The translations under genes were made by a program, and so were the position numbers. From NCBI GenBank assembly GCA_038087875.1, contig CM075985.1:25048001-25112000 (forward strand): DNA of 64,000 nt, read 5' to 3'. The DNA is from Malacoraja senta. Taxonomy: Eukaryota. This document shows, in pieces, positions 7,212 to 64,000 of this stretch. The notes beneath the pieces were generated by a model. It did not search any database. It was not told where the DNA came from and saw only the letters and a list, made by a program, of their open reading frames with translations. Each line of letters begins with the position of its first letter. Positions within the stretch are counted from its first letter, which is position 1.

Positions 7212-7264
7212 CTTGCTACGTTCTCTCACCCCCTCTGGCAAATCACATATCCCAAACCACTGAG

Positions 7265-7282
7265 GTCCTGCCATGGTCGCCA
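7265..7282 (-). promoter_or_regulatory. Primer-binding site, tRNA-Arg-like
   Basis: Minus strand reads TGGCGACCATGGCAGGAC 1 nt after the 5' LTR end. It resembles the complement of vertebrate tRNA-Arg(TCG) 3' ends; tRNA identity is from memory. Confidence 0.7.
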
Positions 7283-7283
7283 T

Positions 7284-21685: not shown

Positions 21686-21872
21686 CTAGTTCTTGTATAA
21701 CAGGTATTCTTCCTCGTTTTCACATTTTTTGCACATGCAAGACTTGATGTCAGTATAAGCGTACGTTTCAGTATTTCCATCCTCACACTGTAGTTTTGCA
21801 CTCTTTTCTTCTGTCTCCCTTTCTTCACAGCACTGACATAAATGAACCATCCTCTTTGTTTTAGGGTCAAAT
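21686..21872 (-). CDS. Mucin last coding exon, CTCK C-terminal half
   Basis: ttcttccag| then FDPKTKRMVHLCQCCEERETEEKSAKLQCEDGNTETYAYTDIKSCMCKKCENEEEYLLYKN*. Confidence 0.93.
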
Positions 21873-41800: not shown

Positions 41801-44800
41801 ATACTTAGAGATAATTTATATAATCATCTGGATAAACAGGGTCTGATTAGGAACAGTCAACATGGATTTGTGCCTGGAAGGTCATGTTTGACTAAATTTT
41901 TTAAGAGGTTACTAGGGAAATTGATGAGGGTAAAGCGGTGGATGTTGTCTATATGGACTTCAGTAAGGCCTTTGACAAGGTTCCACATGGAAGGTTGGTT
42001 AAGAAGGTTCAATTGTTGGGTATTAATAGTGGAGTAGCAAGATGGATGCAACAGTGGCTGAATGGGAGATATCAGAGAGTAATGGTGGATAACTGTTTGT
42101 CAGGTTGGAGGCCGGTGACTAGTGGGGTGCCTCAGGGATCTGTGTTGGGTCCACTGTTGTTTGTATTATACATGAATGAACTGGATGAAGGTGTGGTAAA
42201 TTGGATTAGTAATTATGCAGATGATACTAAGATAGGTGGTGTTGTGGATAATGAAGTAGATTTTCAAAGTCTACAGAGAGATTTAGGCCATTTGGAAGAG
42301 TGGGCTGAAAGATGGCAGATGGAGTTTAATGCTGATAAGTGTGAGGTGCTACATCTTGGCAGGACAAATCAAAATAGGACGTACATGGTAAATGGTAGTG
42401 AATTGAGGAATGCAGTTGAACAGAGGGATCTAGGAATAACTGTGCATAATTCCCTGAAGGTGGAATCTCATGTAGATGGGGTGGTAAAGAAAGCTTTTGG
42501 TGTGCTGGCCTTTATAAATCAGAGCATTGCATATAGAAGTTGGGATGTAATGTTAAAATTGTACAAGGCATTGGTGAGGCGAATACTGGAATATGGTGTA
42601 CAATTCTGGTCGCCAAATTATAGGAAAGATGTCAACAAAACAGAGAGAGTACAGAAGGGATTTACTAGAATGTTGCCTGGGTTTCAGCACCTAAGTTACA
42701 GAGAAAGGTTGAACAAGATAGGTCTTTATTCTTTGGAGCGCAGAACGTTAAGGGGGGACCTGATAGAGGTCTTTAAAATTATGAGAGGGATAGACAGAGT
42801 GGACGTGGATAAGCTTTTTCCATTAAGAGTAGGGAAGATTCAAACAAGAGGACATGATTTGAGAATTAAGGGACAAAAGTTTAGGGGCAACATAAACTCA
42901 GAGAGTGGTAGCTGTGTGGAATGAGCTTCCAGTGGAAGTGGTGAAGGCAGGTTCGTTTTTATCATTTAAAAATAAATTGGATAGGTATATGGACGGGAAA
43001 GGAATGGAGGGTTCTGGTCTGAGTGCAGGTAGATGGAACTAGGTGAGAGTATGTGTTCGGCACGGACTAGAAGGGCCGAGATGACCTGTTTCTGTGCTGT
43101 GATTGTTATATGGTTATAAGGTTATGGTTATTTAGAAAATAGTCTAGCCTTTATTCCTACTACCAAAATGCATGACTCCACACTTTGCTACACGATATTC
43201 CATCTGCCATTTCCCTGCCAACTCTCCCAACCTGTCCAGGTCCTTCTGCAGAGTCCCTGCTTTCTCTACACTACCTGCCCCTCCACCTATTTTCGTATCA
43301 TCAGCAAACTTTGCCCCAAAGCCTTCAATCCATCGTCCAAATCATGAATATACAACATGAAGAGCAGCGGCCCCAGCACCAACCCATGCGGAATACCACT
43401 ATTCACTGGCAGGCAACCAGAAAAAGCTGCCTTTAGTGCCACTCTTTGTCTTCTGCAATCCAGCCAACATGCGATACATGCTAGTATCTGCCCTTTGATA
43501 CCATGGGCTCCCATCTTCTCAAGCAGCATAACGTGTGGCACCTTATCAAAGGCTTTCTGAAAATCTAAGAAAACAACATCTACGGACCTTTGCCTGTCCA
43601 GCTCCGATGCAGCAAACTGTCAATTCCACCTCTTCTTATAAAGGTATTCTGATATAATAATAGATAAATAAAGAGATGCAACGAGTTCAGTGAATGTGGT
43701 GTTGTAATCTGTGCTTAGATTTCATTTATTGTGTAAATGCAGAATGCATCTTTGAAACTAGCAAGGATTAATGCTGGACGTTTTGCAGTTTACAATACAT
43801 TTCGAAAAGACTTCGAAGTAAATGTAGAGGGTTGATTAGTAAGTTTGCAGGTGACGCCAAGATTGGCAGAGTCAGGAAAAGTTCACCTTTATAGAACTTT
43901 GGTTCGGCCGCATATGTATTGCGTGCAGTTTCGGTCTCCACATACTAGAAGGTTTTGAAGGCATGGATAGTGTATAGAACAGGTTGACAGAATGCTGCTT
44001 AATTGAGGATATTAGGTATTAGAAGAGGTTGGACAAAATTGGATTGTTATCTCGAGAAGATCGGAAGTTGAGGGGAAGTTGATGGTAGTGTATGGATATA
44101 CGAGAGGCATAAAGAGGATAGAGTGTTATTGCCAGGGTAGAAATGTCAAAGGCTAGAGGGCACAGCTTTAAGGTGAGTGGGGTAAAATATAAAATAAATT
44201 AACGTGGTAATATTTTTTTTTAAATGGAAGGAGCCTCATCTTCAGCACAGATATTGTGGGCTGGTCCTGTGTTCCACGGTTCTATTTGTTGATTTATAAT
44301 ATGTCTACCTGAGAGAGCAACTTTTGCAAAAATTCCAATGTTGAAAATTCTAGTTAAGGATTGACATGTGCTTGTATTTCTGGTGAAATCTATATTTCCA
44401 CTGTTATATGAACAACCCTTACCAGATGTGGAACTGGGAGAAGGCTGATGTGTTGGTGTTGTAGTTGTAACTGGGAAAACAAAAAGAAAAATTCAGCTGC
44501 TGCAGCTTTCTGATGTTGAGTACACTGATGATTGATAACCCCTTAAGAGGTGAAACTCCTTCTTATCTCAATCTGTAACAGGCAAACTCTGATCCAAATC
44601 AATGCTCACTAGCTTTCAATTATATCATATAGGGAAATATCTTATCCACTTCTATATTATTCAAGCAGGTGTACTGAATGTGGAGAAAACAAAATCATGA
44701 ATTTCATTGCATCCAGTAAATTACAATAATCTTGTACATTTCCACACAGACTGCTGCTCTTGATGAAACTGCGCTGGTGAATGCATTTGTGTATTCATAT

Positions 44801-47800
44801 ACGTAACAATGCAATTTTTCATATCATTTGAAGAAGTCCATCACAGACCAGTTTTTGAATGATGAACAGATCGAGTGATTGTTGTCCATCCTGTTGTAAT
44901 GTTAATTTGGAAAAAGAAAGAACGAGAATCAAACAGAAGAAATTCTTGATCACTGCAAGGCAGTATTAGTGATCATCATCCACTATTTGGTTATTTTATA
45001 GACACTCAAAGTTAGAGCAAAAAATAAATAACTTTACCTTACAAGACAAAATGGTCATTGATATTTTTGGCTACTTTTCCCGAGGCAAATTGAACTGCAG
45101 ATTATGTTGATGGATTTGTGTCAAATACTCTCATTGTTTGCTTTTGTAATTATTTGGTGATTCTATTGAAATAAAAACTCACCACTTATGGAACTGGTAG
45201 AAGGAGTTGTTGTCACTTTGGTTGTAGTTGGCTCTGCTGGAGAACAATGGAAAGTATTAAAAAATGAAGCACACCAGCTCCATTTGCAACTAGTCAGAAA
45301 GTGACTTGACGAAACATGGTGAAGTGGATACGAAAAGTAATGATTAAAGTGCAGTCATCAAATACAACATAGCAAGGTTAGGTACCATGGAGCAAACCAT
45401 CAGTTGCACCTCTTCTTATAAAAGTATTCTGACGTAATAATAGATAAATGAAGGGATGCATAGAATACAGTGAACACGGGTGTCAGAATCTGTACACAGA
45501 TTTCATTTGTTTTGTAAATGCAGAGTGCAACTTTCAAACAAGGATCGATGCTGGATGTCTTGCATTTTGCGATACATTTTGAAATGACTTGGAAGTAAAT
45601 GTGGATGGGTTGATAAGTAAAGGCTCTGTCTTATGGTGTTGCGGTCATCGGCGGTGAAGCGAGGCTTCGCCTGTAGAGTGGACCGCACGGCAACGGCGAG
45701 AGCGCCGAGCCTATGCCACGGGAGCGCCGCACAGATGCTGCGCGGGGGCCGAGTGATTTAAATACGGCCGGTCCCACGTGCTTGCGGTAAGTAAAAAAAA
45801 AGGGCGGGCCGACTGCGATGATGTCATTTTGGATCTGCGGGGCTGTGGCGGCGGCCGTGCCGCACTCGTGCCTCACTGGCGGAGGCTGTGCGGTAGGGAC
45901 ATATTTTTGAACAGTGTTGGTTTTAGTTTAGCACCGTGCGGTGTTGGGAACAACGCCGCACGGCCCCGGAATTGTGCGTTTGACCGAGTGCGCGGTCTAT
46001 GGCGGCCCAGGAGCAGTAGATTCTTCCCGTTTCGCCGCCAATGACCACAGACTCGTGAGACAGGCCTTTAAGTTTGCAGATGACACCAAGATTGGCGTAG
46101 TTCTGGAAGAGTTTGGAAGTCATGTTACAGCTTTGTAGATCTTTGGTTAGGCTGCATTTGAAGTATTGTGTGCAGTTTTGGTTTCCGCACACAGGAAGCA
46201 TTTCAAGGCTTTCGAGAGTGTAAAGAGCAGGTTGACCAGAATGCTGCCTAATAGTAAGATTAAACGAGAACTTACCTAATTTTAAGTTTGATCTTCATTT
46301 TATGAGGAGTTACGTGATTCTGATTGGTGATTACGTGAAGAACCCCGCCAGTGCGTCAATCTTCGAAGCAGCGGTGTGAAATCACAAAAAACAACAAGCG
46401 AAGTAATATAGTATCATAATAAAACGAGTAATACAAGAACTTCCATCTGACCTTTATGATAGAGGGTTGGGTCGTGGTGGGCACGTAATCACCAACGTAA
46501 CTCCTCACAAAATAAAGATCAAACTTAGGTAAGTTCTCGTTTAATCTTACTATTTTACTTCGGAGTCACGTGAGTGACTACGTGAAGATTTTAAAGCTTT
46601 GTGATTTCATGCCGCAGACAAAGCCCGGCTTCTCAATGCATTGATTGACTCGGAACGAGAATATTCAATTATGCATTAATAATAACATTTGTACCACAAA
46701 TGCAGTAATTCATTTATTTGAATAAAAGAATTAATAGTATCCCCTTTAACCCAGGGAAAATTAAGCAGAACTTAATATAGTATTTGCAAACAGCCCTGTA
46801 TTGGCAATAGCCCGATGGTAAAAGTATTGAAACACCAACTTATTAGATCACCCGGCGTCTGTGAGAATATGATCGACGGGACTTCCTTCGCCCTGGTCGT
46901 CAATGTTGCTGCTAAACTGAATGGAATGTAAAACCATCAATGTTCACACGTGCAGCAACTAAAACTTGTTTTTAACCATCTTAAAATAGTCTAAACTGAC
47001 ACTATCTTGTATGGTTTTTCGTGAATGATAAACAATCTTGTTTTCATATTTCATAAGATCTTTGTAGCCTCAATTTTTTGCAATAAATATGTCTTAACAT
47101 ACAGACATGGATCCATAAAATATGTTAATAAAACAATCTTGAATCCTGTCACACCTGATCCTACTTAATTTGAGTAGTTCATAAAATGTAAAACATAACA
47201 TAATCCTGAGGTACTTCTGTGTATCTGTAACTTTGTAATGTTACAAGTGCCATAAACATGACTACCTTCATGCTGAACTTGGCCAAATCAGAATCGTACC
47301 AAGACTCCTTTGATGAAGTAGCTTAAAACAATTCTATATTCCGGATTCCCTCCTAGGTTTAGAAGGTCTGGAATTAAAATTCCTTCCATTAATCTGGAAA
47401 TAAAAGAACGAGACTCAACAGGATGTCTTTCCAACCTCATCAAATAAAAACGAGGAATAATATACTACTGTGTGAATAAATCGCACTATACCTCAACCCA
47501 TTAAATAGAGGTCAATCCAAGATATTTGAGACATGTGCCGTACAACATTCCATATCCTTTTATACTCAGAAATGTTTTCCCCTCATTCTTTACATAATGG
47601 GAAAGCAGTATTTACAGAGTCACAACTCAGATTCACAAATGTACTGCTTTTGAGTACTCTTCCGCCAGACTGCTGTAAGCATGTCCACAGCATGCCCAGA
47701 CAATCCTCTTTTTTAAACCTGCATCCATACAGGCATATGACGGATGTTGCTCTCCAATTATCGAATACACCAGTAACTTCCTTCTTTTGGGAACATTTAT

Positions 47801-50800: not shown

Positions 50801-53800
50801 CTGTGGAAAAAATCCCCACAGACCCACAGCAAACGGACACGGAAATACTTCCAAAAAAGTTTATACTTACCTTGTAGTTTAAAAACTACAATTCCACTAG
50901 AGGAGCTCTGCTCCTCGTGTCCGTTTGCGCCAATGCGTCTGACGTAATGACGCGCAGGTGCACTGGCGGGATTCTTCACGTAGTCACTCACGTGACTCCG
51001 AAGTAAAATGTAAGATATTTGTTGTTCGGTTGGTAAAATTGGATTATTTTCTCGAGAAGATCGGAAGTTGAGGGAACACCTGATGGTGGTGTCTGGAAAT
51101 AAGAGACGCATAAATAGGGTAGAGTGTTATTTCCAGGGTAGAAATGTCAAAGGCTAGAGGGCACAGCTTTAAGGTGAGTGGGGGAAAATGTAATGGAGAT
51201 TACCGTATTAAGATTTTTAACATTTAAAAAAAAATGTTCGGCACAGATAATAGACAATAAACAATAGTTGCAGAAGTAGACCATTCGGCCCTTCGTGCCA
51301 GCACTGCCATTCAATGTGATCATGGCTGATCATCCCCAATCAGTACCCCGTTCCTGCCTTTTCCCCATATCCCCTGACTCCGCTATCTTTAAGAGCCCTA
51401 TCTAGCTCTCTCTTGAAAGTATCCAGAGAACCGTCCTCCACCGCCGTCTGAGGCAGAGAATTCCACAGACTCACAACTCTCTGTGAGAAAAAGTGTTTCT
51501 TCATCTCCATTTTAAATGGCTTACCTCTTATTCTTAAACTGTGCCCCCTGGTTCTGGATTCCCCAACATCGGGAACATGTTTCCTGCCTCTAGCGTGTCC
51601 AAATCCTTAACAATCTTATATGTTTCAATAAAATTCCCTCTCATCCTTCTAAACTCCAGAGTGTACAAGCCCAGCCACCCCATTATCTCAGCACATGACA
51701 GTCCCGCCATCCCGGGAATTAACCTTGTAAACCTACGCTGCACTCCCTCAATAGCAAGAATGTCCGTCCTCAAATTATGGGACCAAAACTGCACACAATA
51801 CTCCAGGTGTGGTCTCACTAGGGCCCTGTACAACTGCAGAAGGACCTCTTTGCTCCTATACTCGAATCTTCTTGTTGTAAAGGCCAACATGCCATTCGCT
51901 TTCTTCACTGCCTTCTGTACCTGCATGTTTACTTTCATAGACTGATGAACAAGGACCCCCCAGATCACGTTGTACTTCCCCTTTTCCCAACTTGACGCCA
52001 TTTAGATCAAATCTGCCTTCCTGTTTTTGATACCAAAGTGGATAACCTCACATTTATCCACATTAAACTTCATCTGCCGTGCATCTGCCCACTCCCCCAA
52101 CCTGTCCAAGTCACCCTGCATTCTCATAGCATCCTCCTCACAGTACACTCTGCCACCCAACTTTGTGTCATCTGCAAATTTGCTAATGTTACTTTGAATC
52201 CTTTCATCCAAATCATTGATGTATATTGTAAATAGCTGCGGTCCCAGCACCTAGCCTTGTGGTACCCCACTATTCACTGCCTGCCATTCTGAAAGGGACC
52301 CGTTAATCCCTACTCTTTGTTTCCTATCTGCCAACCAATTTTCTATCCATGTCAGCACTCTACCCCCAATACCATGTGCCCTAATTTTGCCCACTAATCT
52401 CCAATGTGGGACCTTATCAAATGCTTTCTGAAAGTCCAGGTACACTACATCCACTGGCTCTCCCTTTTCCATTTTCCTAGTTACACCCTCAAAAAATTCC
52501 AGAAGATTAGTCAAGCATGATTTCCCCTTCGTAAATCCATGCTGACTCGGACCGATCCTGTTACTGCTATCCAAATGTGCAGCAATTTCATCTTTTATAA
52601 TTGACTCCAGCATCTTCCCTACCACCAATGTCAGGTTAACTGGTCTATAATTCCCTGTTTTCTCTCTCCCGCCATTCTTAAAAAGTGGGATAACATTAGC
52701 TACCCTCCAATCCACAGGAACTGATCCTGAGTCTATAGAACATTGGAAAATTATCACCAATGCATCCACGATTTCTAGAGCCGCTTCCTGGAGTACCCTG
52801 GGATGCAGACCATCAGGCTCTGGGGATTTATCAGCCTTCAGTCCCATCAGTCTACCCAACACCATTTCCTGTCTAATGTGGATTTCCTTCAGTTCCTCCA
52901 TCACCCCAGATCTTCTGACCACTACTATATCAGAAAGATTGTTTGTGTCCTCCTTAGTGAAGACGGATCCAAAGTACCTGTTCAACTCATCTGCCATTTC
53001 CTTATTCCCCATAATAAATTCACGTTTTTCGGTCTTCAAGGATCCAACTTTGGTCTTAACTAATTCTTTCCTCTTCACATACCTAAAGAAGCGTTTACTA
53101 TCCCCCTTTATATTCTTGGCTAGCTTACCTTCGTACCTCAACTTTTCTCCTCGTATTGTCTTTTTAGTTATCTTCTGTTGCTCTTTAAACATTACCCAAT
53201 CCTTTTGCTTCCCGCTCATCTTTGCTACGTTGTACTTCTTCTCTTTTATTTTTTTACTGTCCCTGATGTCCCTTGTCAGCCACAGTCGCCCCTTACTGCC
53301 CTTGGAATCTTTCTTCCTCCTAGGAATGAACTGATCCTGCACCTTCTGTATTATTCCTAGAAATACCTGCCATTGGTGTTCCACTGTCATCCCTGCTAGT
53401 GCATCTTTCAGTCAACTTTGGCCAGCTCCTCCCTCATGGCCCCATAGTCTCCTTTATTCAACTGTAACAATGACACCTCCGATCTACCCTTCTCCCTCTC
53501 CAATTGTAGATTAAACCTGACCATATTAAGGTCAATACCTGCTAATGGCTCATTAACCTCAAGTTCCTTTATAAAAATCCGGTTCATTACATAACACTAA
53601 ATCCAGAAGTGCCTTCTCCCTGGTTGGCACCAATACAAGCTGCTCTAAGAATCCATCACAATGGCACTACAAAGTAACGTTCTTGGGGTCCAGTACCAAC
53701 CTGATTTTCCTAGTCTACCTGCATGTTGTAATCTCCCATAACAACCACAGCATTACCTTTGCTACATGCCAATTATATCCTCTGATTCAACTTGCACCCT

Positions 53801-56800
53801 ATGTCCAGGCTACTGTTTGTGGGCCTGTAGATAAGTCCCATTGGTGTCTTTTTACCCCTACAATTTCTTAGTTCTATCCATAGTGACACCACATCAACTG
53901 TTTTAGTTCACAATGATACTGTGGACTGAAGATATTGTGGATTGTGGTACTGTGCTGTACTGTTGTATTTGTAGATTTATAATATGTCAGCCTAAGAGTA
54001 CTACTTTCTCAAAAATTGCAACGTTGAAAATACTAAATAAGGATTGACATGTGCTTGCATTTCTAGTAAAACATGCATTTCTGATGTCATTTGAACAAAT
54101 ACTTCACTTACCAGATGTGGAACTGGAAGGAGGGTGATGTGTTGATGCAGTTGTAACTGGGGAAAAAAAAGAAAACATTCAGCTGCTGCAGCTTTCTGAT
54201 GTTGAGTACACTGATGATTGATAACACCTTAAGAGATGAAACTCCTTCTATCTCGATCAGTAACAGGCAAACTCTGATCCAAATCAATGCTCTAGCTTTC
54301 AATTATGTCATATAGAGAGATATCTTATCCACTTCTATATTATTCAAGCAGGTGTACTGAATGTGGAAAGAACAAAATCATGAATTTAAATGCATCCTGC
54401 AAATGACAATAATCTTGCACATTTCCACAGACTGCTGCTCTTGATGAACCTGCGCTGGTGAATGCATTCGTATAATCATATACGTAACAATGCAAATTTT
54501 CTTATATCATTTGAAGAAATCCATCACTTACCAGTTGTTGAATGATGAACAGACGGAGTGATTGTTGTACTTCCTGTTGTAATTGTAATTTGGAAACAGA
54601 AAGAAAAATAATCAAATTGAAGACATTTTTGACTACTGCAAAGTAGTCAAATTGATCATCGTCCACTATTTGGTTATTTTATAGACACTCAATGTTAGAG
54701 CAAAAATAAATTATTGCTTTTTAATATAACATGGTCTCCTTCAGGTGGATGTGGAAATGTCAACATTGGTACAAAAAACACTATAAAATGACTATAAAAA
54801 TCACTATTTAATCACTATAAAAAATCACTATTTAAAACCACTATTGAGGAAGGACATCCTTGTGATTGAGTCAGTGCAGCGTAGGATCACGAGATTGATC
54901 CCAGGGATGGCGGGGATGGCATATGAGGAAAGATTGAAAAAACTAGGCTTGTATTCACTGGAGTTTAGAAGGATGAGGGGGTTTCTTATAGCAACATATA
55001 AAATTATAAAAGGACTGGACAAGCTAGAGGCAGGAAAATTGTTCCCAATGTTGGGCGAGTCCAGAACCAGGAGCCACAGTCTTAGAATAAAGGGGAGGTC
55101 ATTTAAGACTGAGGTGAGAAAAAACATTTTCACCCAGTTAGTTCTGAATTTATGGAATTCCCTGACACAGAGGGCAGTGGAGGTCAAATCACTGGATGGA
55201 TTTAAGAGAGAGTTAGATAGAGCTCTAGGGTCTAGTGGAGTCAAGGGATATGGGGAGAAGACAGGCACGGGTTATTGATAGGGGACGATCAGCCATGATC
55301 ATAATGAATGGCGGTGCTGTTTCGAAGGGCCGAATGGCCTCCTCCTCCACCTATTTTCTTTGTTTCTATGTTACAATGTTTCTATGTTAATCATGTGATT
55401 TTTTTCAAAACTTTATTTACCTTACTAGACAAAATGGTGCTTGTTTTTTTGGCTATATCCTGAGGCAACTTGAAATGCAGATTTGAGTTGATGGATTTGT
55501 GTCAAATACTCTCATTGTTTGCTTTTGTAATTATTTGGTGATTCTATTGAAAAAAGAACTCACCACTTGTGGAACTGGTAGAGGGAGTTGTTGTTACTTT
55601 GGTTGTACTTGGCTCTGCTGACGAACAAGGGAAAGTATTAAAAAATGCTGCACACCAGCTCCATTTGCAACTAATTAGAGAGAGTGACTTGACAAACATG
55701 GTGAAGTGGATACGTCAAGTAATGATTAATGTTCAGTCCTCAAATACAACATAGCAAGGTTAGGTACCATGGAGCAAACCATCAGTTGCACCTGTTCTTA
55801 TAAATGTATTCTGACGTAATGATAGATAAATTAGGGGATGCATAGAGTACAGTTAACATGGGTGTCGCAATCTGTACACAGATTTAACTTGATTTGTAAA
55901 TGCAGAGTGCAACTTTCAAACAAGGATCGATGCTGAATTTTTTGCAATTTGCGATACATTTCTAAAAGTCTTGGAAGTACATGTAGATGGGTTGATTAGT
56001 AAGTTTGCAGATGACACCAAGATTGGTATAGTTCTGGAAGAGTTTGGAAGTCATGTAACAGCTTTGTAGATCTTTGGTTAGGCCACATTTGAAGTATTCA
56101 ATGCTCTAGCTTTCAATTATGTCATATAGGAAAATATCTTATCCACTTCTATATTATTCAAGCAGGTGTACTGAATGTGGAAAGAACAAAATCATGAATT
56201 TTATTGCATCCTGTAAATGACAATAATCTTGTACATTTCCACAGACTGCTGCTCTTCATGAAACTACGCTGGTGAATGCATTTGTGTATTCATATACGTA
56301 ACAATGCATTTTTTCTTATATCATTTGAAGAAATCCATCACTTACCAATTGTTGATTGATGAACAGACGGAGTGATTGTTGTACTTCCTGTTGTAATTGT
56401 AATTTGGAAACAGAAAGAAAAATCATCAAATTGAAGACATTTTTGACTACGGCAAAGCAGTAAAATTGATCATCATCCACTATTTGGTTATTTTAGAGAC
56501 ACTCAATGTTAGAGCAAAAATAAATTATTGTTTTTTAATATAACATGGTCTCCTTCAGGTGGATAAGTGGAAATGGCAACATTGGTACAAAAATCACTAT
56601 TTAATCATGTGACGTTTTTCAAAACTTTTTTTACCTTACTAGACAAAATGGTGCTTGATTTTTTTGGCTATATCCTGAGGCAACTTGAAATGCAGATTTG
56701 AGTTGATGGATTTGAGTCAAATACTCTCATTGTTTGCTTCTGTAATTATTTGGTGAATCTATTGAAAAAAGAACTCACCACTTGTGGAACTGGTAGAGGG

Positions 56801-59800
56801 AGTTGTTGTTATTTTGGTTGTAGTTGGCTCTGCTGGAGAACATGGGAAAGTATTAAAAAAATGCTGAATACCAGCTCCATTAGCAACTCATTAGAGAGAG
56901 TGACTTGACAAACATGGTGAAGTGGATACGAAAAGTAATGATTAATGTGCAGTCCTCAAATACAACATAGCAAGGTTAGGTACCATGGAGCAAACCATCA
57001 GTTGCACCTGTTCTTATAAATGTATTCTGCCATAATGATAGATAAATGAAAGGATGCATAGAGTACAGTGAACATGGGTGTCGCAATCTGTACACAGATT
57101 TAACTTGATTTGTAAATGTAGAGTGCAACTTTCAAACAAGGATCGATGCTGAATTTTTTGCAATTTGCGATACATTTCTAAAAGACTTGGAAGTAAGTGA
57201 AGATGGGTTGATTAGTAAGTTTGCAGATGACACCAAGATTGGTGTAGTTCTGGAAGAGTTTGGAAGTCATGTTACAGCTTTGTAGATCTTTGGTTAGGCC
57301 ACATTTGAAGTATTGCGTGCAGTTTTGGTCTCAACACACAGGAAGCATTTGAAGGCTTTGGAGAGTGTAAAGAACAGGTTGACCAGAATGTTGCCTAATG
57401 TAAGTTATTTGTTGTTCGGTTGGTAAAATTGGATTATTTTCTCGAGAAGATCGGAAGTTGAGGGAACACCTGATGGTAGTGTCTGGAAATATGAGACGCA
57501 TAAATAGGGTAGAGTGTTATTTCCATGGTAGAAATGTCAAAGGCTAGAGGGCACAGCTTTAAGGTGAGTGGGGGAAAATGTAATGGAGATTACCGTATTA
57601 AGATTTTTAACAATTAAAAAAAAATGTTCGGCACAGATACTGTGGACCGAAGATATTGTGGATTGTGGTCCTGCGCTGTACTGTTGTATTTGACGATTTA
57701 TAAAATGTCAGCCTAAGTGTACTACTTTCGCAAAAATTGCAACGTTGAAAATACTAAATAAGGATTGACATGTGCTTGCATTTCTAGTAAAACATGCATT
57801 TCTGATGTCATTTGAACAAATACTTCACTTACCAGATGTGGAACTGGGAGGAGGGGAATGTGTTGTTGATGCAGTTGTAACTGGGAAAACAAAAGTAAAA
57901 ATTCAGCTGCTGCAGCTTTCTGATGTTGAGTACACTGATGATTAATAACGCCTTAATAGATGAAACTCCTTCTATCTTGATCTGTAACAGGCAAACACTG
58001 ATCCAAATCAATGCTCACTAGCTTTCAATTTATGTCAGATAGGGAAATATCTTATCCACTTCTATATTATTCAAGCAGGTGTACTGAATGTGGAAAGAAC
58101 AAAATCATGAATTTAATTGCATCCTGTAAATGACAATAATCTTGTACATTTCCACAGACTGCTGCTCTTGATGACACTGCGCTGGTGAATGCATTCGTGT
58201 ATTCATATACGTAACAATGCAATTTTTCTTATATCATTTGAAGAAATCCATCACTTACCAGTTGTTGAATGATGAACAGATGGAGTGATTGTTGTACTTC
58301 CTGTTGTAATTATAATTTGGAAACAGAAAGAAAAATAATCAAATTGAAGACATTTTTGACTACTGCAAAGCAGTAAAATTGATCATCATCCACTATTTGG
58401 TTATTTTATAGACACTCAAGCTTAGAGCAAAAATAAATTATTGCTTTTTAATATAACATGGTCTCCTTCAGGTGGATGTGGAAATGTCAACATTGGTACA
58501 AAAATCACTATTTAATCATGTGACGTTTTTCAAAACTTTATTTACCTTACTAGACAAAATGGTGCTTGATTTTTTTGGCTATTTTCCTGAGGCAACTTGA
58601 AATGCAGATTTGAGTTGATGGATTTGTGTCAAATAATCTCATTGTTTTCTTTTGTAATTAATTGGTGATTCAATTGAAAAAAGAACTCACCACTTGTGAA
58701 ACTGGTAGAGGGAGTTGTTACTTTGGTTGTAGTTGGCTCTGCTGGAGAACAAGGGAAAGTATTAAAAAATGCTGCACATCAGCTCTATTTGCAGCTAATT
58801 AGAGAGAGTGACTTGACAAACATGGTGAAGTGGATACGAAAAGTAATGATTAATGTGCAGTCCTCAAATACATCATAGCAAGGTTAGGTACCATGGAGCA
58901 AACCATCAGTTGCACCTGTTCTTATAAATGGATTCTGACGTAATGATAGATAAATGAAGGGATGCATAGAGTACAGTGAACATGGGTGTCGCAATATGTA
59001 CACAGATTTAACTTGATTTGTAAATGCAGAGTGCAACTTTCAAACAAGGATCGATGCTGAATTTTTTGCAATTTGCGATACATTTCTAAAAGACTTGGAA
59101 GTAAATGAAGATGGGTTGATTAGTAAGTTTGAAGATGACACCAAGATTAGTGTAGTTCTGGAAGAGTTTGGAAGACATGTTACAGCTTTGTAGATCTTTG
59201 GTTAGGCCACATTTGAAGTATTGCGTGCAGTTTTGGTCTCAACACACAGGAAGCATTTGAAGGCTTTGGCGAGTGTAAAGAACAGGTTGACCAGAATGCT
59301 GCCTAATGTAAGATATTTGTTGTTCGGTTGATGAAATTGGATTATTTTCTCGAGAAGATCGGAAGTTGAGGGAACACCTGATGGTAGTGTCTGGAAATAT
59401 GAGACGCATAAATAGGGTAGTGTTATTTCCAGGGTAGAAATGTCAAAGGCTAGAGGACACAGCTTTAAGGTGAGTGGGGGAAAATGTAATGGAGTTTACC
59501 GTATTAAGATTTTTAACATTTTTTAAAAAATGATCGGCACAGATACTGTGGACTGAAGATATTGTGGATTGTGGTCCTGCACTGTACTGTTGTATTTGAC
59601 GATTTATAAAATGTCAGCCTAAGAGTACTACTTTCGCAAAAATTGCAACGTTGAAAATACTAAATAAGGATTGACATGTGCTTGCATTTCTAGTAAAACA
59701 TGCATTTCTGGTCATTTCAACAAATCACTTACCAGATGTGGAACTGGGAGGAGGGTGATGTGTTGTTGATGCAGTTGTAACTGGGAAAACAAAAGTAAAA

Positions 59801-62800
59801 ATTCAGCTGCTGCAGCTTTCTGATGTTGAGTACGCTGATGATTGATAACGCCTTAAGAGATGAAACTCCTTCTATCTCGATCTGTAACAGGCAAACTCTG
59901 ATCCAAATCAATGCTCTAGCTTTCAATTATGTCATATAGGGAAATATCTTATCCACTTCTATATTATTCAAGCAGGTGTACTGAATGTGGAAAGATCAAA
60001 ATCATGAATTTTATTGCATCCTGTAAATAACAATAATCTTGTACATTTCCACAGACTGCTGCTCTTGATGAAACTGCGCTGGTGAATGCATTCGTGTATA
60101 CATATACGTAACAATGCAATTGTTCTTATATCATTTGAAGAAATCCATCACTTACCAGTTGTTGAATGATGAACAGACGGAGTGATTGTTGTACTTCCTG
60201 TTGTAATTGTAATTTGGAAACAGAAAGAAAAATAATCAAATTGAAGACATTTTTGACTACTGCAAAGCAGTAAAATTGATCATCATCCACTATTTGGTTA
60301 TTTTATAGACACTCAATGTTAGAGCAAAAATAAATTATTGCTTTTTAATATAACATGGTCTCCTTCAGGTGGATGTGGAAATGTCAACATTGGTACAAAA
60401 ATCACTATAAAATGACTATAAAAATCACTATTTAATCACTATAAAAAATCACTATTTAAAACCACTATTGAGGAAGGACATCCTTGTGATTGAGTCAGTG
60501 CAGCGTAGGATCACGAGATTGATCCCAGGGATGGCAGGGATGGCATATGAGGAAAGATTGAAAAAACTAGGCTTGTATTCACTGGAGTTTAGAAGGATGA
60601 GGGGGTTTCTTATAGCAACATATAAAATTATAAAAGGACTGGACAAGCTAGAGGCAGGAAAATTGTTCCCAATGTTGGGCGAGTCCAGAACCAGGAGCCA
60701 CAGTCTTAGAATAAAGGGGAGGTCATTTAAGACTGAGGTGAGAAAAAACATTTTCACCCAGTTAGTTGTGAATTTATGGAATTCCCTGACACAGAGGGCA
60801 GTGGAGGTCAAATCACTGGATGGATTTAAGAGAGAGTTAGATAGAGCTCTAGGGTCTAGTGGAGTCAAGGGATATGGGGAGAAGACAGGCACGGGTTATT
60901 GATAGGGGACGATCAGCCATGATCATAATGAATGGCGGTGCTGTTTCGAAGGGCCGAATGGCCTCCTCCTCCACCTATTTTCTTTGTTTCTATGTTGCAA
61001 TGTTTCTATGTTAATCATGTGACGTTTTTCAAAACTTTATTTACCTTACTAGACACAATGGTGCTTGATTGTTTTGGCTATTTCCTGAGGCAACTTGAAA
61101 TGCAGATTTGAGTTGATGGATTTGTGTCAAATACTCTCATTGTTTGCTTTTGTAATTATTTGGTGATTCTATTGAAAAAAGAACTCACCACTTGTGGAAC
61201 TGGTAGAGGGAGTTGTTGTTACTTTGGTTGTACTTGGCTCTGCTGACGAACAAGGGAAAGTATTAAAAAATGCTGCACACCAGCTCCATTTGCAACTAAT
61301 TAGAGAGAGTGACTTGACAAACATGGTGAAGTGGATACGACAAGTAATGATTAATGTGCAGTCCTCAAATACAACATAGCAAGGTTAGGTACCATGGAGC
61401 AAACCATCAGTTGCACCTGTTCTTATAAATGTATTCTGACGTAATGATAGATAAATTAGGGGATGCATAGAGTACAGTGAACATGAGTGTCGCAATCTGT
61501 TCACAGATTTAACTTGATTTGTAAATGCAGAGTGCAACTTTCAAACAAGGATCGATGCTGAATTTTTTGCAATTTGCGATACATTTCTAAAAGTCTTGGA
61601 AGTACATGTAGATGGGTTGATTAGTAAGTTTGCAGATGACACCAAGATTGGTATAGTTCTGGAAGAGTTTGGAAGTCATGTAACAGATTTGTAGATCTTT
61701 GGTTAGGCCACATTTGAAGTATTCAATGCTCTAGCTTTCAATTATGTCATATAGGGAAATATCTTATCCACTTCTATATTATTCAAGCAGGTATACTGAA
61801 TGTGGAAAGAACAAAATCATGAATTTTATTGCATCCTGTAAATGACAATAATCTTGTACATTTCCACAGACTGCTGCTCTTCATGAAACTACGCTGGTGA
61901 ATGCATTCGTGTATTCATATACGTAACAATGCAATTTTTCTTGTATCATTTGAAGAAATCCATCACTTACCAGTTGTTGAATGATGAACAGACGGAGTGA
62001 TTGTTGTACTTCCTGTTGTAATTGTAATTTGGAAACAGAAAGAAAAATCATCAAATTGAAGACATTTTTGACTACGGCAAAGCAGTAAAATTGATCATCA
62101 TCCACTATTTGGTTATTTTAGAGACACTCAATGTTAGAGCAAAAATAAATTATTGTTTTTTAATATAACATGGTCTCCTTCAGGTGGATAAGTGGAAATG
62201 GCAACATTGGTACAAAAATCACTATTTAATCATGTGACGTTTTTCAAAACTTTTTTTACCTTACTAGACAAAATGGTGCTTGATTTTTTTGGCTATATCC
62301 TGAGGCAACTTGAAATGCAGATTTGAGTTGATGGATTTGAGTCAAATACTCTCATTGTTTGCTTCTGTAATTATTTGGTGAATCTATTGAAAAAAGAACT
62401 CACCACTTGTGGAACTGGTAGAGGGAGTTGTTGTTACTTTGGTTGTAGTTGGCTCTGCTGGAGAACAAGGGAAAGTATTAAAAAAATGCTGAATACCAGC
62501 TCCATTAGCAACTAATTAGAGAGAGTGATTTGACAAACATGGTGAAGTGGATACGAAAAGTAATGATTAATGTGCAGTCCTCAAATACAACATAGCAAGG
62601 TTAGGTACCATGGAGCAAACCATCAGTTGCACCTGTTCTTATAAATGTATTCTGACGTAATGATAGATAAATGAAAGGATGCATAGAGTACAGTGAACAT
62701 GGGTGTCGCAATCTGTACACAGATTTAACTTGATTTGTAAATGCAGAGTGCAACTTTCAAACAAGGATCGATGCTGAATTTTTTGCAATTTGCGATACAT

Positions 62801-63925
62801 TTCTAAAAGACTTGGAAGTAAGTGAAGATGGGTTGATTAGTAAGTTTGCAGATGACACCAAGATTGGTGTAGTTCTGGAAGAGTTTGGAAGTCATGTAAC
62901 AGCTTTGTAGATCTTTGGTTAGGCCACATTTGAAGTATTGCGTGCAGTTTTGGTCTCAACACACAGGAAGCATTTGAAGGCTTTGGAGAGTGTAAAGAAC
63001 AGGTTGACCAGAATGCTGCCTAATGTAAGTTATTTGTTGTTCGGTTGGTAAAATTGGATTATTTTCTCGAGAAGATCGGAAGTTGAGGGAACACCTGATG
63101 GTAGTGTCTGGAAATATGAGACGCATAAATAGGGTAGAGTGTTATTTCCATGGTAGAAATGTCAAAGGCTAGAGGGCACAGCTTTAAGGTGAGTGGGGAA
63201 AAATGTAATGGAGATTACCGTATTAAGATTTTTAACAATTAAAAAAAAATGTTCGGCACAGATACTGTGGACCGAAGATATTGTGGATTGTGGTCCTGCG
63301 CTGTACTGTTGTATTTGACGATTTATAAAATGTCAGCCTAAGTGTACTACTTTCGCAAAAATTGCAACGTTGAAAATACTAAATAAGGATTGACATGTGC
63401 TTGCATTTCTAGTAAAACATGCATTTCTGATGTCATTTGAACAAATACTTCACTTACCAGATGTGGAACTGGGAGGAGGGGAATGTGTTGTTGATGCAGT
63501 TGTAACTGGGAAAACAAAAGTAAAAATTCAGCTGCTGCAGCTTTCTGATGTTGAGTACACTGATGATTAATAACGCCTTAATAGATGAAACTCCTTCTAT
63601 CTTGATCTGTAACAGGCAAACACTGATCCAAATCAATGCTCACTAGCTTTCAATTTATGTCAGATAGGGAAATATCTTATCCACTTCTATATTATTCAAG
63701 CAGGTGTACTGAATGTGGAAAGAACAAAATCATGAATTTAATTGCATCCTGTAAATGACAATAATCTTGTACATTTCCACAGACTGCTGCTCTTGATGAC
63801 ACTGCGCTGGTGAATGCATTCGTGTATTCATATACGTAACAATGCAATTTTTCTTATATCATTTGAAGAAATCCATCACTTACCAGTTGTTGAATGATGA
63901 ACAGACGGAGTGATTGTTGTACTTC
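21686..63925 (-). CDS. Gel-forming mucin (MUC2/MUC5-like), spliced, 5'-partial (continues beyond the window)
   Basis: Exon chain with compatible phases: PTS microexons > CysD > VWD (GDPH) > C8 > TIL > CTCK > stop. Confidence 0.93.
22028..23645 (-). mobile_element. Full-length Tc1 transposon (1618 bp) in the last mucin intron
   Basis: TA TSDs and ~210 bp TIRs starting CAGTGGCTTGCAAAAGT. Confidence 0.96.
22246..23266 (-). pseudogene. Tc1 DD34E transposase (premature TGA at 23138-23140; frameshift near 22895)
   Basis: Starts MKPKEHTRQVRDKVVEKFK; has WSDETK, QQDNDPKH and SPDLNPIE motifs. Confidence 0.93.
23858..23957 (-). CDS. Mucin exon, CTCK N-terminal half
   Basis: tttcag|..CKTTVVHKIVGNGTCQTDIEMKQCVGNCFSST..|gtaagt; 100 nt, phase 1 to phase 2. 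Confidence 0.92.
24547..24647 (-). CDS. Mucin exon, TIL second half (probable GC donor)
   Basis: ccttttcag|..TVEPGTHTSEAGCFCPDGMMMTENSTECVSACE..|gcaagt. Confidence 0.85.
24761..24830 (-). CDS. Mucin exon, TIL first half
   Basis: tttcaag|..HTCPHNLVYKACPNKTDDRCVN..|gtaagt; 70 nt. Confidence 0.9.
26950..27810 (+). mobile_element. CR1 5' region/ORF1 remnant with a ~130 bp tandem duplication
   Basis: Zinc-finger-like VCRMWEARD...CGKCVQ plus leucine-zipper remnants near 27450-27620. Duplicated gcaatcaaagagaagcagggagaagagcttattg. Confidence 0.6.
27811..28645 (-). mobile_element. CR1 3' end (5'-truncated)
   Basis: ORF 27934..28470 (LYRALVRPHLEYCVQFWSP), 3' UTR and (CTATTGT)n tail. Confidence 0.92.
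28646..29760 (+). mobile_element. CR1 3' end (5'-truncated), back-to-back with the previous copy
   Basis: ORF 29109..29426 and 3' UTR ending cctattgtct. Confidence 0.92.
30597..30766 (-). CDS. Mucin exon, C8 domain
   Basis: ctattcag|..PFEKCRQKVGIEHFKETCIYDNCGPNVTCSSLDAAADECFKLGFCVDWRPYTNGSC..|gtaagt; 170 nt. Confidence 0.94.
31286..31645 (-). mobile_element. CR1 3' end fragment
   Basis: ORF 31436..31633 (FFTQRVVNLWNSLP) plus 3' UTR. Confidence 0.88.
32329..32521 (-). CDS. Mucin exon, VWD end / C8 linker
   Basis: tag|..PCSRRNGTGVSSDCCSTTASEWIYNDIKKPYC...HPICDLITG..|gtaagt; 193 nt, phases fit both neighbours. Confidence 0.85.
32615..32795 (-). CDS. Mucin exon, VWD C-terminal part
   Basis: tttcacag|LTVNGHDMKIPYF...FLTNTQGQC G|gtatgt; 181 nt. 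Confidence 0.92.
33360..33589 (-). CDS. Mucin exon, VWD N-terminal part with GDPH
   Basis: [31 protein letters not shown]...ENNK|gtaagt; 230 nt. Confidence 0.95.
33685..33862 (-). CDS. Mucin exon, Cys-rich region before VWD
   Basis: ctctttag|CNETWTTKCKNYTC...GKRPVKIITDNGCCYRLECV|gtcagt; 178 nt. Confidence 0.9.
35944..36335 (-). CDS. Mucin exon, CysD (WxxW) domain plus short PTS; absent from the ORF track
   Basis: tttcag|..LVCDGTWSAWSNQNSP...IECEAVG...VTCNLKKGLIC...CLDYKIRVCC...CVCETTPRRK|gtaagt. Confidence 0.94.
37238..37294 (-). CDS. Mucin PTS microexon (57 nt)
   Basis: ctgctcag|..ATTPTAGRTTVSTPSSTT G|gtaagt; phase 1-1. Confidence 0.85.
37755..38024 (-). mobile_element. HE1-like tRNA-derived SINE (elasmobranch V-SINE type)
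   Basis: tRNA-like head, central ggaggaaaccggag...ggggagaatgtacaaa domain and CR1-like tail. Family recognised by eye. Confidence 0.75.
38516..38548 (-). CDS. Mucin PTS microexon (33 nt)
   Basis: ctttccaag|..TTLTTSISTT G|gtaagt; phase 1-1. Confidence 0.8.
38836..38897. repeat. (GA)n microsatellite
   Basis: Direct reading. Confidence 0.95.
38930..39400 (+). mobile_element. CR1 ORF2 internal fragment
   Basis: KSPGPD, VPEDWRVANVVPLFKKG and QHGF motifs. Confidence 0.85.
39471..39515 (-). CDS. Mucin PTS microexon, type A-like (45 nt)
   Basis: ttccccag|..TTTTTHQPPFSSTF G|gtaagt. Confidence 0.83.
41213..43590 (-). mobile_element. CR1 fragment split by a younger opposite-strand CR1
   Basis: Minus ORFs 41213..41410 and 43287..43541. 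The host reads ccccattag [insert] tttagaaaatagtct. Confidence 0.8.
41571..43130 (+). mobile_element. CR1 3' 1.55 kb (RT), nested
   Basis: ORF 41938..42924 with GVPQGSVLGP and YADDTK; (GGTTAT)n tail. Confidence 0.92.
44423..44470 (-). CDS. Mucin PTS microexon A0 (48 nt)
   Basis: ttttcccag|..TTTTPTHQPSPSSTS G|gtaagg. Confidence 0.83.
45183..45236 (-). CDS. Mucin PTS microexon C0 (54 nt)
   Basis: ttctccag|..EPTTTKVTTTPSTSSIS G|gtgagt. Confidence 0.83.
45621..46068. mobile_element. PIF/Harbinger-like MITE
   Basis: GC-rich 448 bp insert absent from paralogous units, with TAA TSD and imperfect TIRs AGGCTCTGTCTTATG / CGTGAGACAGGCCTT. Confidence 0.8.
46250..51009 (-). mobile_element. DIRS1-type tyrosine-recombinase retrotransposon, complete termini, decayed ORFs
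   Basis: Internal region ~46482-46590 is complementary to both termini, and ATT is present at both ends. RT (NGLTSVPRKFTK), RNase H (INNTTAMACIN), methyltransferase-like (VVPDGSTQPWFP) and weak YR remnants. Absent from paralogous units. Confidence 0.9.
51247..53890 (-). mobile_element. CR1 LINE, ~2.6 kb, 5'-truncated
   Basis: ORFs 52251..53390, 52002..52250 and 51534..52001 cover RT to the C-terminus; 3' UTR and tail present. Confidence 0.95.
54112..54156 (-). CDS. PTS microexon A1 (45 nt)
   Basis: ccccag|..TTASTHHPPSSSTS G|gtaagt. Confidence 0.83.
54532..54573 (-). CDS. PTS microexon B1 (42 nt)
   Basis: acaacag|..STTITPSVHHSTT G|gtaagt; weak acceptor. Confidence 0.65.
54843..55387 (+). 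mobile_element. CR1 3' end inserted in a repeat unit
   Basis: ORF 54844..55278 and (TTTCTATG)n tail; absent in sister units. Confidence 0.92.
55564..55617 (-). CDS. PTS microexon C1 (54 nt)
   Basis: cag|CAG..EPSTTKVTTTPSTSSTS G|gtgagt. Confidence 0.82.
56346..56387 (-). CDS. PTS microexon B2 (42 nt)
   Basis: STTITPSVHQSTI; gtaagt donor. Confidence 0.62.
56779..56832 (-). CDS. PTS microexon C2 (54 nt)
   Basis: EPTTTKITTTPSTSSTS; gtgagt donor. Confidence 0.82.
57833..57880 (-). CDS. PTS microexon A3 (48 nt)
   Basis: TTASTTHSPPPSSTS; canonical splice sites. Confidence 0.83.
58259..58300 (-). CDS. PTS microexon B3 (42 nt)
   Basis: STTITPSVHHSTT; gtaagt donor. Confidence 0.65.
58691..58741 (-). 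CDS. PTS microexon C3 (51 nt)
   Basis: One-codon-shorter variant EPTTTKVTTPSTSFTS; frame preserved. Confidence 0.82.
59733..59780 (-). CDS. PTS microexon A4 (48 nt)
   Basis: TTASTTHHPPPSSTS; canonical splice sites. Confidence 0.83.
60156..60197 (-). CDS. PTS microexon B4 (42 nt)
   Basis: STTITPSVHHSTT; gtaagt donor. Confidence 0.65.
60467..61012 (+). mobile_element. CR1 3' end, duplicate of 54843-55387
   Basis: Same truncation point and near-identical ORF (60468..60902). Confidence 0.92.
61189..61242 (-). CDS. PTS microexon C4 (54 nt)
   Basis: EPSTTKVTTTPSTSSTS; gtgagt donor. Confidence 0.82.
61971..62012 (-). CDS. PTS microexon B5 (42 nt)
   Basis: STTITPSVHHSTT; gtaagt donor. Confidence 0.65.
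62404..62457 (-). CDS. PTS microexon C5 (54 nt)
   Basis: EPTTTKVTTTPSTSSTS; gtgagt donor. Confidence 0.82.
63458..63505 (-). CDS. PTS microexon A6 (48 nt)
   Basis: TTASTTHSPPPSSTS; canonical splice sites. Confidence 0.83.
63884..63925 (-). CDS. PTS microexon B6 (42 nt)
   Basis: STTITPSVHHSTT; gtaagt donor. Confidence 0.65.
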
Positions 63926-64000
63926 CTGTTGTAATTATAATTTGGAAACAGAAAGAAAAATAATCAAATTGAAGACATTTTTGACTACTGCAAAGTAGTC

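What the first reader, a model, noticed from the sequence alone, without database searches (positions are those of the whole stretch)
53915..64000. Exon-bearing higher-order tandem repeat (3 subunits, 8 microexons, ~5.62 kb) with datable internal markers
Seen: a basic ~1.9 kb unit contains A, B and C exons plus a decayed CR1 relic. One subunit gained a CR1 3' end (54843 and 60467), and the next lost ~0.7 kb including exon A (junction gaagtattcaatgctctagc at ~56095 and ~61720). Both markers recur 5.62 kb apart. Inference: the array first grew as monomers and then amplified as a trimer, satellite-style, inside a coding gene. It is probably copy-number polymorphic.
Basis: partly seen in the sequence, partly recalled or inferred. 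Interest (0 to 1): 0.7.

Follow-up and report, generated by a model that had tools for sequence, protein, structure and literature searches.

The report
Three-unit repeat block in skate mucin gene
A 5.6-kb block of three 1.9-kb repeat units, each carrying tiny in-frame exons for the sugar-coated part of a skate mucus protein, has been duplicated in tandem; the structure is real, but both its ingredients are already known elsewhere.

Summary
Observation confirmed. 53915-58374 matches 59542-63999 at 98.3% (period 5627 bp). The 1.9-kb sub-units are only 94-97% alike. Both markers recur in both copies: a 5'-truncated CR1 insert (54844-55381 and 60468-61005) and a ~0.69-kb deletion (junctions 56097/98 and 61722/23).

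The exons lie on the minus strand. There are 15 micro-exons of 42-54 nt in the stretch. All are phase 1-1 with canonical splice sites, and S+T is 64%. Their frame runs into a phase-1 CysD exon, followed by VWD, C8 and cystine-knot exons. So this is the PTS (sugar-carrying) core of a MUC2/MUC5-type gel-forming mucin. Earlier scan notes call the genome a skate.

Trees pair C1/C1', C2/C2' and B2/B2', so one three-unit block was duplicated. Only 1.8 copies are visible. Divergence between them is mosaic: 5.6% in the first 750 bp, about 1% elsewhere, and a 706-bp identical tract. That undermines clean dating. Satellite-style amplification and copy-number polymorphism were not tested. Splicing was not shown directly.

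Multi-exon PTS domains are published (chicken Muc13, frog Otogl), and so are exon-bearing three-unit higher-order repeats (HORs; NBPF/Olduvai). This scan has already found sister micro-exon mucin arrays on other DNA of this genome. Verdict: a new member of a known kind.

The parts
53915..59541 (-). First (gene-3'-most) 5627-bp block: sub-units 1 (53915-56097), 2 (56098-57635) and 3 (57636-59541)
59542..64000 (-). Second block (sub-units 1', 2' and the start of 3'), cut by the window end
   Evidence: 98.3% to 53915-58374
54112..54156 (-). Micro-exon A1, 45 nt, phase 1-1, xTTASTHHPPSSSTS. The other A exons are 48 nt: 57833-57880, 59733-59780, 63458-63505
54532..54573 (-). Micro-exon B1, 42 nt, xSTTITPSVHHSTT. 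The other B exons: 56346-56387, 58259-58300, 60156-60197, 61971-62012, 63884-63925
55564..55617 (-). Micro-exon C1, 54 nt with a tandem CAGCAG acceptor, xEPSTTKVTTTPSTSSTS. The other C exons: 56779-56832, 58691-58741 (51 nt), 61189-61242, 62404-62457
54844..55381 (+). 5'-truncated CR1 3' end inserted in the intron between exons C1 and B1. It is preceded by an expanded (AAAATCACTAT)n tract at 54773-54844. The twin copy is at 60468-61005
   Evidence: empty site visible at 56583-56610 and 58495-58520
56097..56098 (.). Junction of a ~0.69-kb deletion that removed the relic's 3' end and the whole A region with exon A. The twin junction is at 61722/61723
57135..57635 (+). Decayed CR1 relic present in every unit, antisense to the gene. 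Other copies: about 55920-56097 (cut short), 59045-59541, 62760-63260
   Evidence: CR1 ORF2 residues 199-295 at 57251-57517 and 59159-59431; FADD motif read
51250..53914 (-). CR1 element inserted at a monomer boundary with a 4-bp target duplication (GATA). It marks the visible left end of the homogeneous array
51007..51249 (-). Relic tail of the next unit to the left: 97.9% to the position-2 relic, 95.1% to position 3
43607..46260 (-). Older decayed unit, 78-92% to copy 3. It carries exons C-old 45183-45236, B-old 44849-44890 (donor weakened to GTCTGT) and A-old 44423-44470
37238..37294 (-). Last PTS micro-exon before CysD, 57 nt, xATTPTAGRTTVSTPSSTT. It resembles the residues just before CysD in a sawfish gene model. 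A further A-type exon lies at 39471-39515
35944..36335 (-). CysD exon (Mucin2_WxxW). Its acceptor is in phase 1, matching the micro-exon frame
21689..33862 (-). C-terminal exons of the gene: pre-D4 Cys-rich 33680-33760, VWD 33363-33587, C8 30577-30765, TIL-like 24545-24831, cystine knot 23836-23961 and 21716-21880, with the stop near 21689

Best explanation
The stretch is the 3'-most end of a tandem array of 1.9-kb genomic units. The array encodes, on the minus strand, the Pro/Thr/Ser-rich, O-glycosylated core of a MUC2/MUC5-type gel-forming mucin of a skate.

Each full unit carries three micro-exons, read C, then B, then A along the gene, plus an old CR1 fragment in an intron. Every exon starts with two bases and ends with one base of a split codon. 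Any number and order of units therefore keeps the reading frame. That is why an intronic CR1 insertion and a 0.69-kb deletion removing exon A were tolerated.

A block of three neighbouring units carrying both scars was then copied in tandem, most likely by unequal homologous recombination between units out of register. This gives the 5627-bp period. Each block adds 126 residues, about 64% of them Ser or Thr.

Shown here: the repeat structure, the markers, the exon anatomy, frame continuity into CysD, and the identity of the gene family.

Inferred: the recombination mechanism, splicing of these particular exons, and glycosylation.

The divergence between the two blocks is uneven, and identity decays stepwise toward the array's edge. 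This suggests that conversion or crossover kept reshaping the copies after the duplication.
For: - Period and identities: (HOR partners 98.5-100%; different positions 94-97%).
- Clades (C1,C1'), (C2,C2') and (B2,B2') at 100/98-99.
- Shared markers.
- All 20 micro-exons have lengths divisible by 3, AG acceptors with pyrimidine tracts and GTAAGT/GTGAGT donors. Exon length changes are 3-nt only.
- The CysD exon acceptor is in phase 1.
- Pfam hits: CysD 5.8e-16, VWD 2.9e-15, C8 2e-9, Cys_knot 4.5e-6.
- PDB: MUC5B/5AC/MUC2 CysD and the MUC2 D4 region.
- The sawfish model XP_051890114.1 'mucin-2-like' is collinear with the CysD-to-knot exons. Its PTS residues before CysD resemble exon 37238-37294.
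- In two small runs of a related species, depth sits in the exon A and C bins (27-80). Neighbouring intron bins read from 0 to under 4.
- Identity falls toward the array edge (98, 92, 90, 86, 78%), and TE insertions sit only there.
Against: - No splice junction read was seen. The joints table was filled by CR1 contigs, the two small runs are only guessed to be RNA, and exon B bins were nearly empty.
- The exons are no more conserved than the introns among recent copies (6.5% versus 7.5% variable sites).
- Only 1.8 blocks are visible.
- Abundant contigs from elsewhere are consensus-like and do not carry position-specific signatures.
- A1/B1 do not pair with A1'/B1'.
Confidence: 0.8

Rival explanations
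1. A true, many-copy higher-order repeat. The three-unit block, with both scars, is the amplification unit of the whole array of roughly 50 kb, is still being homogenised, and varies in copy number between individuals.
For: - Two-tier identity and shared markers.
- A 706-bp tract with no difference between blocks, where about 7 differences are expected. This suggests recent conversion.
- An X1 contig nearest to C2'/C2 but identical to neither, so a third C2-like copy exists.
Against: - That third contig is only 1% nearer to position 2 than to positions 1 and 3. The X2 contig is equidistant to all.
- The edge relic is in the wrong register.
- No population data are available.
Confidence: 0.35
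2. Assembly artefact: a single 5.6-kb block was written twice.
For: The region is repetitive and the window ends inside it. The best DNA holders, X1 and X2, may be the assembly's own samples.
Against: - There are 78 differences between the copies, including an in-frame 3-nt indel. They are distributed unevenly.
- Read contigs show further, non-identical copies.
Confidence: 0.03
3. A non-coding intronic macrosatellite. The micro-exons are open frames kept only because the copies are young, and they are not spliced into the mRNA.
For: There is no excess conservation of exons over introns among recent copies. No junction reads were seen.
Against: - The older copies at 78-90% identity still keep frame, length divisible by 3 and splice signals.
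- The frame matches the CysD acceptor phase.
- S/T/P makes up 76% of the residues counted.
- The sawfish gene model has PTS residues spliced directly to CysD.
- Depth in the related species sits in the exon A and C bins.
Confidence: 0.07

Closest known systems
NBPF / Olduvai (DUF1220) triplets: 3mer HOR of ~1.6-kb exon-bearing units in human NBPF genes (PMC9584774, PMC11675761)
   Same: Tandem units of 1.6-1.9 kb, each carrying small exons, grouped in threes. The three-unit block is the copied unit inside a protein-coding gene.
   Different: NBPF monomers differ by about 20% and encode a folded domain from two exons. Here the monomers differ by 3-6% and encode disordered PTS peptide from three micro-exons. 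Only one block duplication is seen. The positions are told apart by structural scars (a TE insert and a deletion) as well as by substitutions.
Chicken Muc13 PTS domain encoded by multiple exons, one repeat per exon (PMC1552070)
   Same: A mucin domain written as many near-identical small exons instead of one large exon.
   Different: Muc13 is a transmembrane SEA-domain mucin with 20-residue repeats. Here the gene is a gel-forming CysD/VWD mucin with three alternating exon types. No higher-order block was described for Muc13.
Xenopus tropicalis Otogl (MucXS), with a multi-exonic central mucin domain (PMC5789918)
   Same: A gel-forming mucin whose central domain is multi-exonic.
   Different: The paper states that Otogl lacks typical CysD domains. 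The present gene has a CysD next to the array.
Pristis pectinata 'mucin-2-like' XP_051890114.1 (P0040)
   Same: Collinear with the CysD, pre-D4, VWD, C8 and cystine-knot exons of the window (55-81% identity per exon). It has PTS residues directly before CysD.
   Different: The model is only 496 aa and holds just the last few PTS residues.
LPA kringle IV-2 repeat and the nebulin triplicate region (own knowledge, not checked here)
   Same: Kilobase-scale, intron-containing, exon-bearing tandem units in frame. Copy-number variation changes protein length.
   Different: These encode folded domains in mammalian genes and have no three-unit substructure with TE scars.

Membership tests
Gel-forming mucin of the MUC2/MUC5 type | PTS (Pro/Thr/Ser-rich) region | tested here: met
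   Micro-exon translations give S+T 76 of 118 and P 14 of 118 per block.
Gel-forming mucin of the MUC2/MUC5 type | CysD (Mucin2_WxxW) domain within or next to the PTS region | tested here: met
   PF13330 at 5.8e-16. The best PDB hits are MUC5B, MUC5AC and MUC2 CysD. This feature is defined in PMC4948705.
Gel-forming mucin of the MUC2/MUC5 type | C-terminal fourth VWD-C8-TIL unit | tested here: met
   VWD 2.9e-15, C8 2e-9, and TIL only weak at 0.025. The VWD exon matches the MUC2 C-terminal D4 structures at 3.5e-17.
Gel-forming mucin of the MUC2/MUC5 type | C-terminal cystine knot | tested here: met
   PF00007 at 4.5e-6 on 21689-21883. It is collinear with the end of P0040.
Gel-forming mucin of the MUC2/MUC5 type | N-terminal D1-D2-D'-D3 assembly | not testable with these tools
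   The gene's 5' part lies beyond the window end.
Higher-order tandem repeat (HOR) | Copies at the same position in successive blocks are much more alike than neighbouring monomers | tested here: met
   98.5-100% against 94-97%, with clades at 100%. The exception is the A1/B1 edge piece, at 95.6-96.4%.
Higher-order tandem repeat (HOR) | Several (three or more) head-to-tail blocks with the same period | tested here: inconclusive
   Only 1.8 blocks lie in the window. Read contigs show further monomers but no clear position signature.
Multi-exonic PTS domain (chicken Muc13 / frog Otogl design) | Each small exon encodes one repeat unit, with a frame-compatible phase | tested here: met
   All exons are phase 1-1 and 42-57 nt.
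Multi-exonic PTS domain (chicken Muc13 / frog Otogl design) | Exons shown to be spliced into mRNA | tested here: inconclusive
   One search shows depth in the exon A and C bins in two runs guessed to be RNA, from a related species. No junctions were listed. The sawfish model supports only the last PTS exon to CysD joint.

The most novel reading that the evidence does not exclude
The three-unit block with its TE and deletion scars is the living amplification unit of the whole array of more than 50 kb in a MUC2/MUC5-type gene. Block number would then vary between individual skates. Mucin rod length would evolve by macrosatellite-style unequal crossing-over of intron-containing cassettes, and the scars would let each crossover be traced.
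Probability: 0.3. Interest if true: 0.45.

Novelty: new member of a known kind. Interest (0 to 1): 0.3.

Why it matters
In mammals, mucin length varies through repeats inside one giant exon. Here the same end is reached with kilobase units that carry introns, so the domain can change by unequal recombination and, in principle, by exon skipping. The scars give a clear worked example of how such an array grows: first by single units, then by a larger block. The edge of the array shows how homogenisation fades. It is useful for annotating cartilaginous-fish mucins, whose database models miss most of these exons. It does not open a new kind of system.

Tried and rejected
- Tandem Repeats Finder found only the 11-24-bp tract at the CR1 junction, because the 1.9-kb and 5.6-kb periods exceed its range.
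- The single read-laying run was swamped by the CR1 insert, with depth of 1e5-1e6. All listed joints were CR1 artefacts, so splice junctions could not be read. Contig depths could not be turned into copy number.
- No run on record as RNA exists for the window's own species.
- Exon-versus-intron conservation gave no signal.
- A 6-mer search of the 150 representative relatives for the A/B/C peptides found only low-complexity chance matches, and none with all three types.
The sawfish locus and the Logan contig of P0015 could therefore not be fetched for a cross-species comparison of the array.
Exons were searched one at a time by reference.
- I rejected absolute dating from the 1% and 5% divergences. 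Divergence between the blocks is mosaic, and I have no checked substitution rate for skates.
Full report
**What is there.**
- A self-comparison of the window shows that 53915-58374 and 59542-63999 align at 98.3% over 4464 columns, a period of 5627 bp. Shorter pieces inside the stretch match each other at 94-97%.
- The basic unit is 1906 bp (57636-59541). I split it into four parts: an A region, a B region, a C region and a decayed CR1 fragment.
- On the + strand the stretch reads as follows:
  - copy 1, 53915-56097
  - copy 2, 56098-57635
  - copy 3, 57636-59541
  - then 1' (59542-61722), 2' (61723-63260) and the start of 3', cut by the window end.
- Tandem Repeats Finder sees none of this because the periods are too long. 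It reports only a short (AAAATCACTAT)n tract at 54773-54844 and its twin at 60397-60468.
- The window has no N runs.

**The markers.**
- Copy 1 carries a 5'-truncated CR1 3' end at 54844-55381. It matches residues 222-319 of a CR1 ORF2 found elsewhere in the window.
- The empty site is visible in copies 2 and 3.
- The CR1 copy in block two (60468-61005) differs at only three sites.
- Between copy 1 and copy 2 about 0.69 kb is missing. The loss covers the 3' end of the relic and the whole A region with its exon. The junction is the same at 56097/56098 and 61722/61723.
- The relic in every unit matches CR1 ORF2 residues 199-295 and lies on the + strand.

**The exons and the gene.**
- The exons are on the minus strand. 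In 53915-64000 there are 15 micro-exons:
  - A, 45/48 nt, xTTAST(T)H(H/S)PP(P/S)SSTS
  - B, 42 nt, xSTTITPSVHHSTT
  - C, 51/54 nt, xEP(S/T)TTKVTT(T)PSTSSTS.
- Each has a pyrimidine tract and an AG acceptor, and a GTAAGT or GTGAGT donor.
- Each begins with two bases and ends with one base (G) of a split codon.
- One block encodes 378 nt, or 126 residues. Among the 118 residues counted exon by exon, 76 are Ser or Thr and 14 are Pro.
- Further, older micro-exons of the same types lie at 45183-45236, 44849-44890, 44423-44470, 39471-39515 and 37238-37294.
- The next exon downstream, 36335-35944, has its acceptor in phase 1. The micro-exon frame therefore reads straight into it.
- That exon is a CysD domain (Mucin2_WxxW, 5.8e-16). 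Further downstream come VWD (2.9e-15), C8 (2e-9), a weak TIL and a cystine knot (4.5e-6), with the stop near 21689.
- The CysD exon is nearest to the solved CysD domains of MUC5B, MUC5AC and MUC2. The VWD exon is nearest to the MUC2 C-terminal D4 structures.
- CysD plus a fourth VWD unit is what separates MUC2/MUC5 from MUC6/MUC19 in the literature (PMC4948705).
- A search of 1.84 billion representatives with the CysD exon found 285 relatives.
  - The best long ones are shark proteins named 'mucin-5AC-like' or left uncharacterised.
  - The best spliced short one is 'mucin-2-like' of the sawfish Pristis pectinata, XP_051890114.1, at 66% identity.
  - The sawfish model is collinear with the window's exons from CysD to the knot.
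  - Its residues just before CysD (…SRKTVSIPSSTT-E-PVCNG) resemble exon 37238-37294 followed by the CysD exon (…GRTTVSTPSSTT-E-LVCDG).
Every exon was searched by reference on its own.

**Is it a higher-order repeat?**
- Identities by position:
  - C1/C1' 98.5%, C2/C2' 98.9%, B2/B2' 98.6%, B3/B3' 99.2%, A3/A3' 100%, R2/R2' 99.4%
  - different positions 94-97%.
- Maximum-likelihood trees rooted with the old unit give (C1,C1'), (C2,C2') and (B2,B2') at 100/98-99.
- Together with the two shared scars, this shows that a block of three already-diverged units was copied as a whole.
- Three facts complicate the picture.
  - First, of the 78 differences between the blocks, 42 fall in the first 750 bp (53915-54664, 5.6%) and 36 in the remaining 3.7 kb (about 1%). 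The switch lies within about 100 bp of the CR1 junction tract. In the trees B1 does not pair with B1'.
  - Second, there is a 706-bp tract (57575-58280) with no difference at all, where about seven are expected.
  - Third, the relic piece just left of the array (51007-51249) is 97.9% like the position-2 relic and only 95.1% like position 3, the type a strict HOR would put there.
- The history is therefore a mosaic of duplication plus later conversion or crossover. The divergences are not clean clocks.

**The array edge.**
- Toward the 3' end of the gene, identity to copy 3 falls stepwise:
  - 95-98% at 51007-51249
  - 92% at 46069-46260
  - 90% at 45033-45620
  - 86% at 44249-45056
  - 78.5% at 43607-44217
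  - 80% for a fragment at 39408-39722.
- This flank has taken up private insertions. One is a 2.66-kb CR1 on the minus strand at 51250-53914, with a 4-bp GATA target duplication. Another is a 4.75-kb insert at about 46253-51006.
- In the old unit the exons stay open and keep lengths divisible by three. The B-type donor has weakened to GTCTGT.
- Fading homogenisation at the edge is what tandem arrays usually show. That statement is my own knowledge.

**Reads.**
- Two runs of one organism (X1 and X2, from two samples of one study) hold 96-97% of the sampled words of 30500-37400. Seven other organisms hold 17-23%, as expected for relatives a few per cent diverged. No run is on record as RNA.
- The single read-laying run, on 53915-59541, was dominated by the CR1 insert. 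The 15 joints shown are all CR1 artefacts, and 112 more were not shown.
- Three things were useful.
  - An X1 contig spans the CR1 5' junction (54755-54870) with one difference.
  - A 607-nt X1 contig and a 521-nt X2 contig, rebuilt from the listed differences, are identical to no copy in the window. They are 97-98.5% like all positions. More, rather consensus-like monomers therefore exist elsewhere, but the three-unit register of the bulk array is not shown.
  - In two small runs of a related organism, guessed to be RNA, depth sits in the bins that hold exon C (27-80) and exon A (11-51). Neighbouring intron bins read from 0 to under 4, and exon B bins are near 0. This suggests spliced RNA or exon-only conservation. 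It does not prove splicing.
- Exons are not more conserved than introns among the recent copies (6.5% versus 7.5% variable sites). Both exon indels are 3 nt.

**How it most likely works.**
- Units recombine out of register. Because all cassettes are symmetric in phase 1, any gain, loss or internal deletion is frame-neutral.
- The PTS rod therefore lengthens or shortens in steps of 14-18 residues per exon, or 126 residues per block.
- The recombination mechanism, the splicing of these exons and O-glycosylation are inferred, not shown.

**What is known.**
- Chicken Muc13 has its PTS domain on multiple exons, one repeat each (PMC1552070).
- The central domain of frog Otogl is multi-exonic (PMC5789918).
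- Human NBPF genes hold 3mer HORs of ~1.6-kb units, each with two exons (PMC9584774, PMC11675761).
- Earlier notes of this scan, which I did not check, call the genome a skate. They report sister micro-exon mucin arrays 141, 184 and 246 kb beyond this window's end, one of them said to be spliced as predicted. Another note says this array runs on for about 45 kb.
- The present stretch is thus a clear example of two known designs combined, not a new kind.

**Limits.**
- Copy-number polymorphism and the structure beyond 64000 remain untested.

Noticed in passing
window 51250-53914: CR1 element on the minus strand with long RT and C-terminal ORFs. It is inserted exactly at a monomer boundary with a 4-bp GATA target duplication and an (ATTGTCTA)-type 3' tail. 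It is private to the array edge.
   Followed up: partly
window ~46253-51006: A 4.75-kb insertion of unknown type splits the CR1 relic of the old unit. It contains a 66-bp direct repeat (50088-50153 and 50184-50249, 86%) and a G+C-richer part.
   Followed up: no
window 22246-22956 (minus): An intact-looking 236-aa Tc1/mariner-type transposase ORF sits in the intron between the two cystine-knot exons of the mucin gene.
   Followed up: no
window 500-8000: LTR retrotransposon with an integrase ORF (3653-4624, minus). Near-identical ORF starts at 535-1068 and 7637-7951 suggest the two LTRs.
   Followed up: no
window 54773-54844 and 60397-60468: The target motif AAAATCACTAT is expanded about six-fold exactly at the 5' junction of the truncated CR1 insert. 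The switch from 5.6% to 1% divergence between the blocks lies within about 100 bp of it.
   Followed up: partly
window 32607-32888 (minus); P0040 residues 281-295: An open frame with a VWD-like continuation (LTVNGHDMKIPYF) lies between the VWD and C8 exons. The sawfish model passes from the first half of VWD to C8 after about 15 residues, so the D4 VWD may be shortened or mis-modelled.
   Followed up: no
Read laying on window 57332 and 54844: Genomic contigs join relic position 57332 to insert position 54844. The old relic and the younger insert are adjacent parts of the same CR1 consensus, so this is a mapping effect and not a rearrangement.
   Followed up: partly
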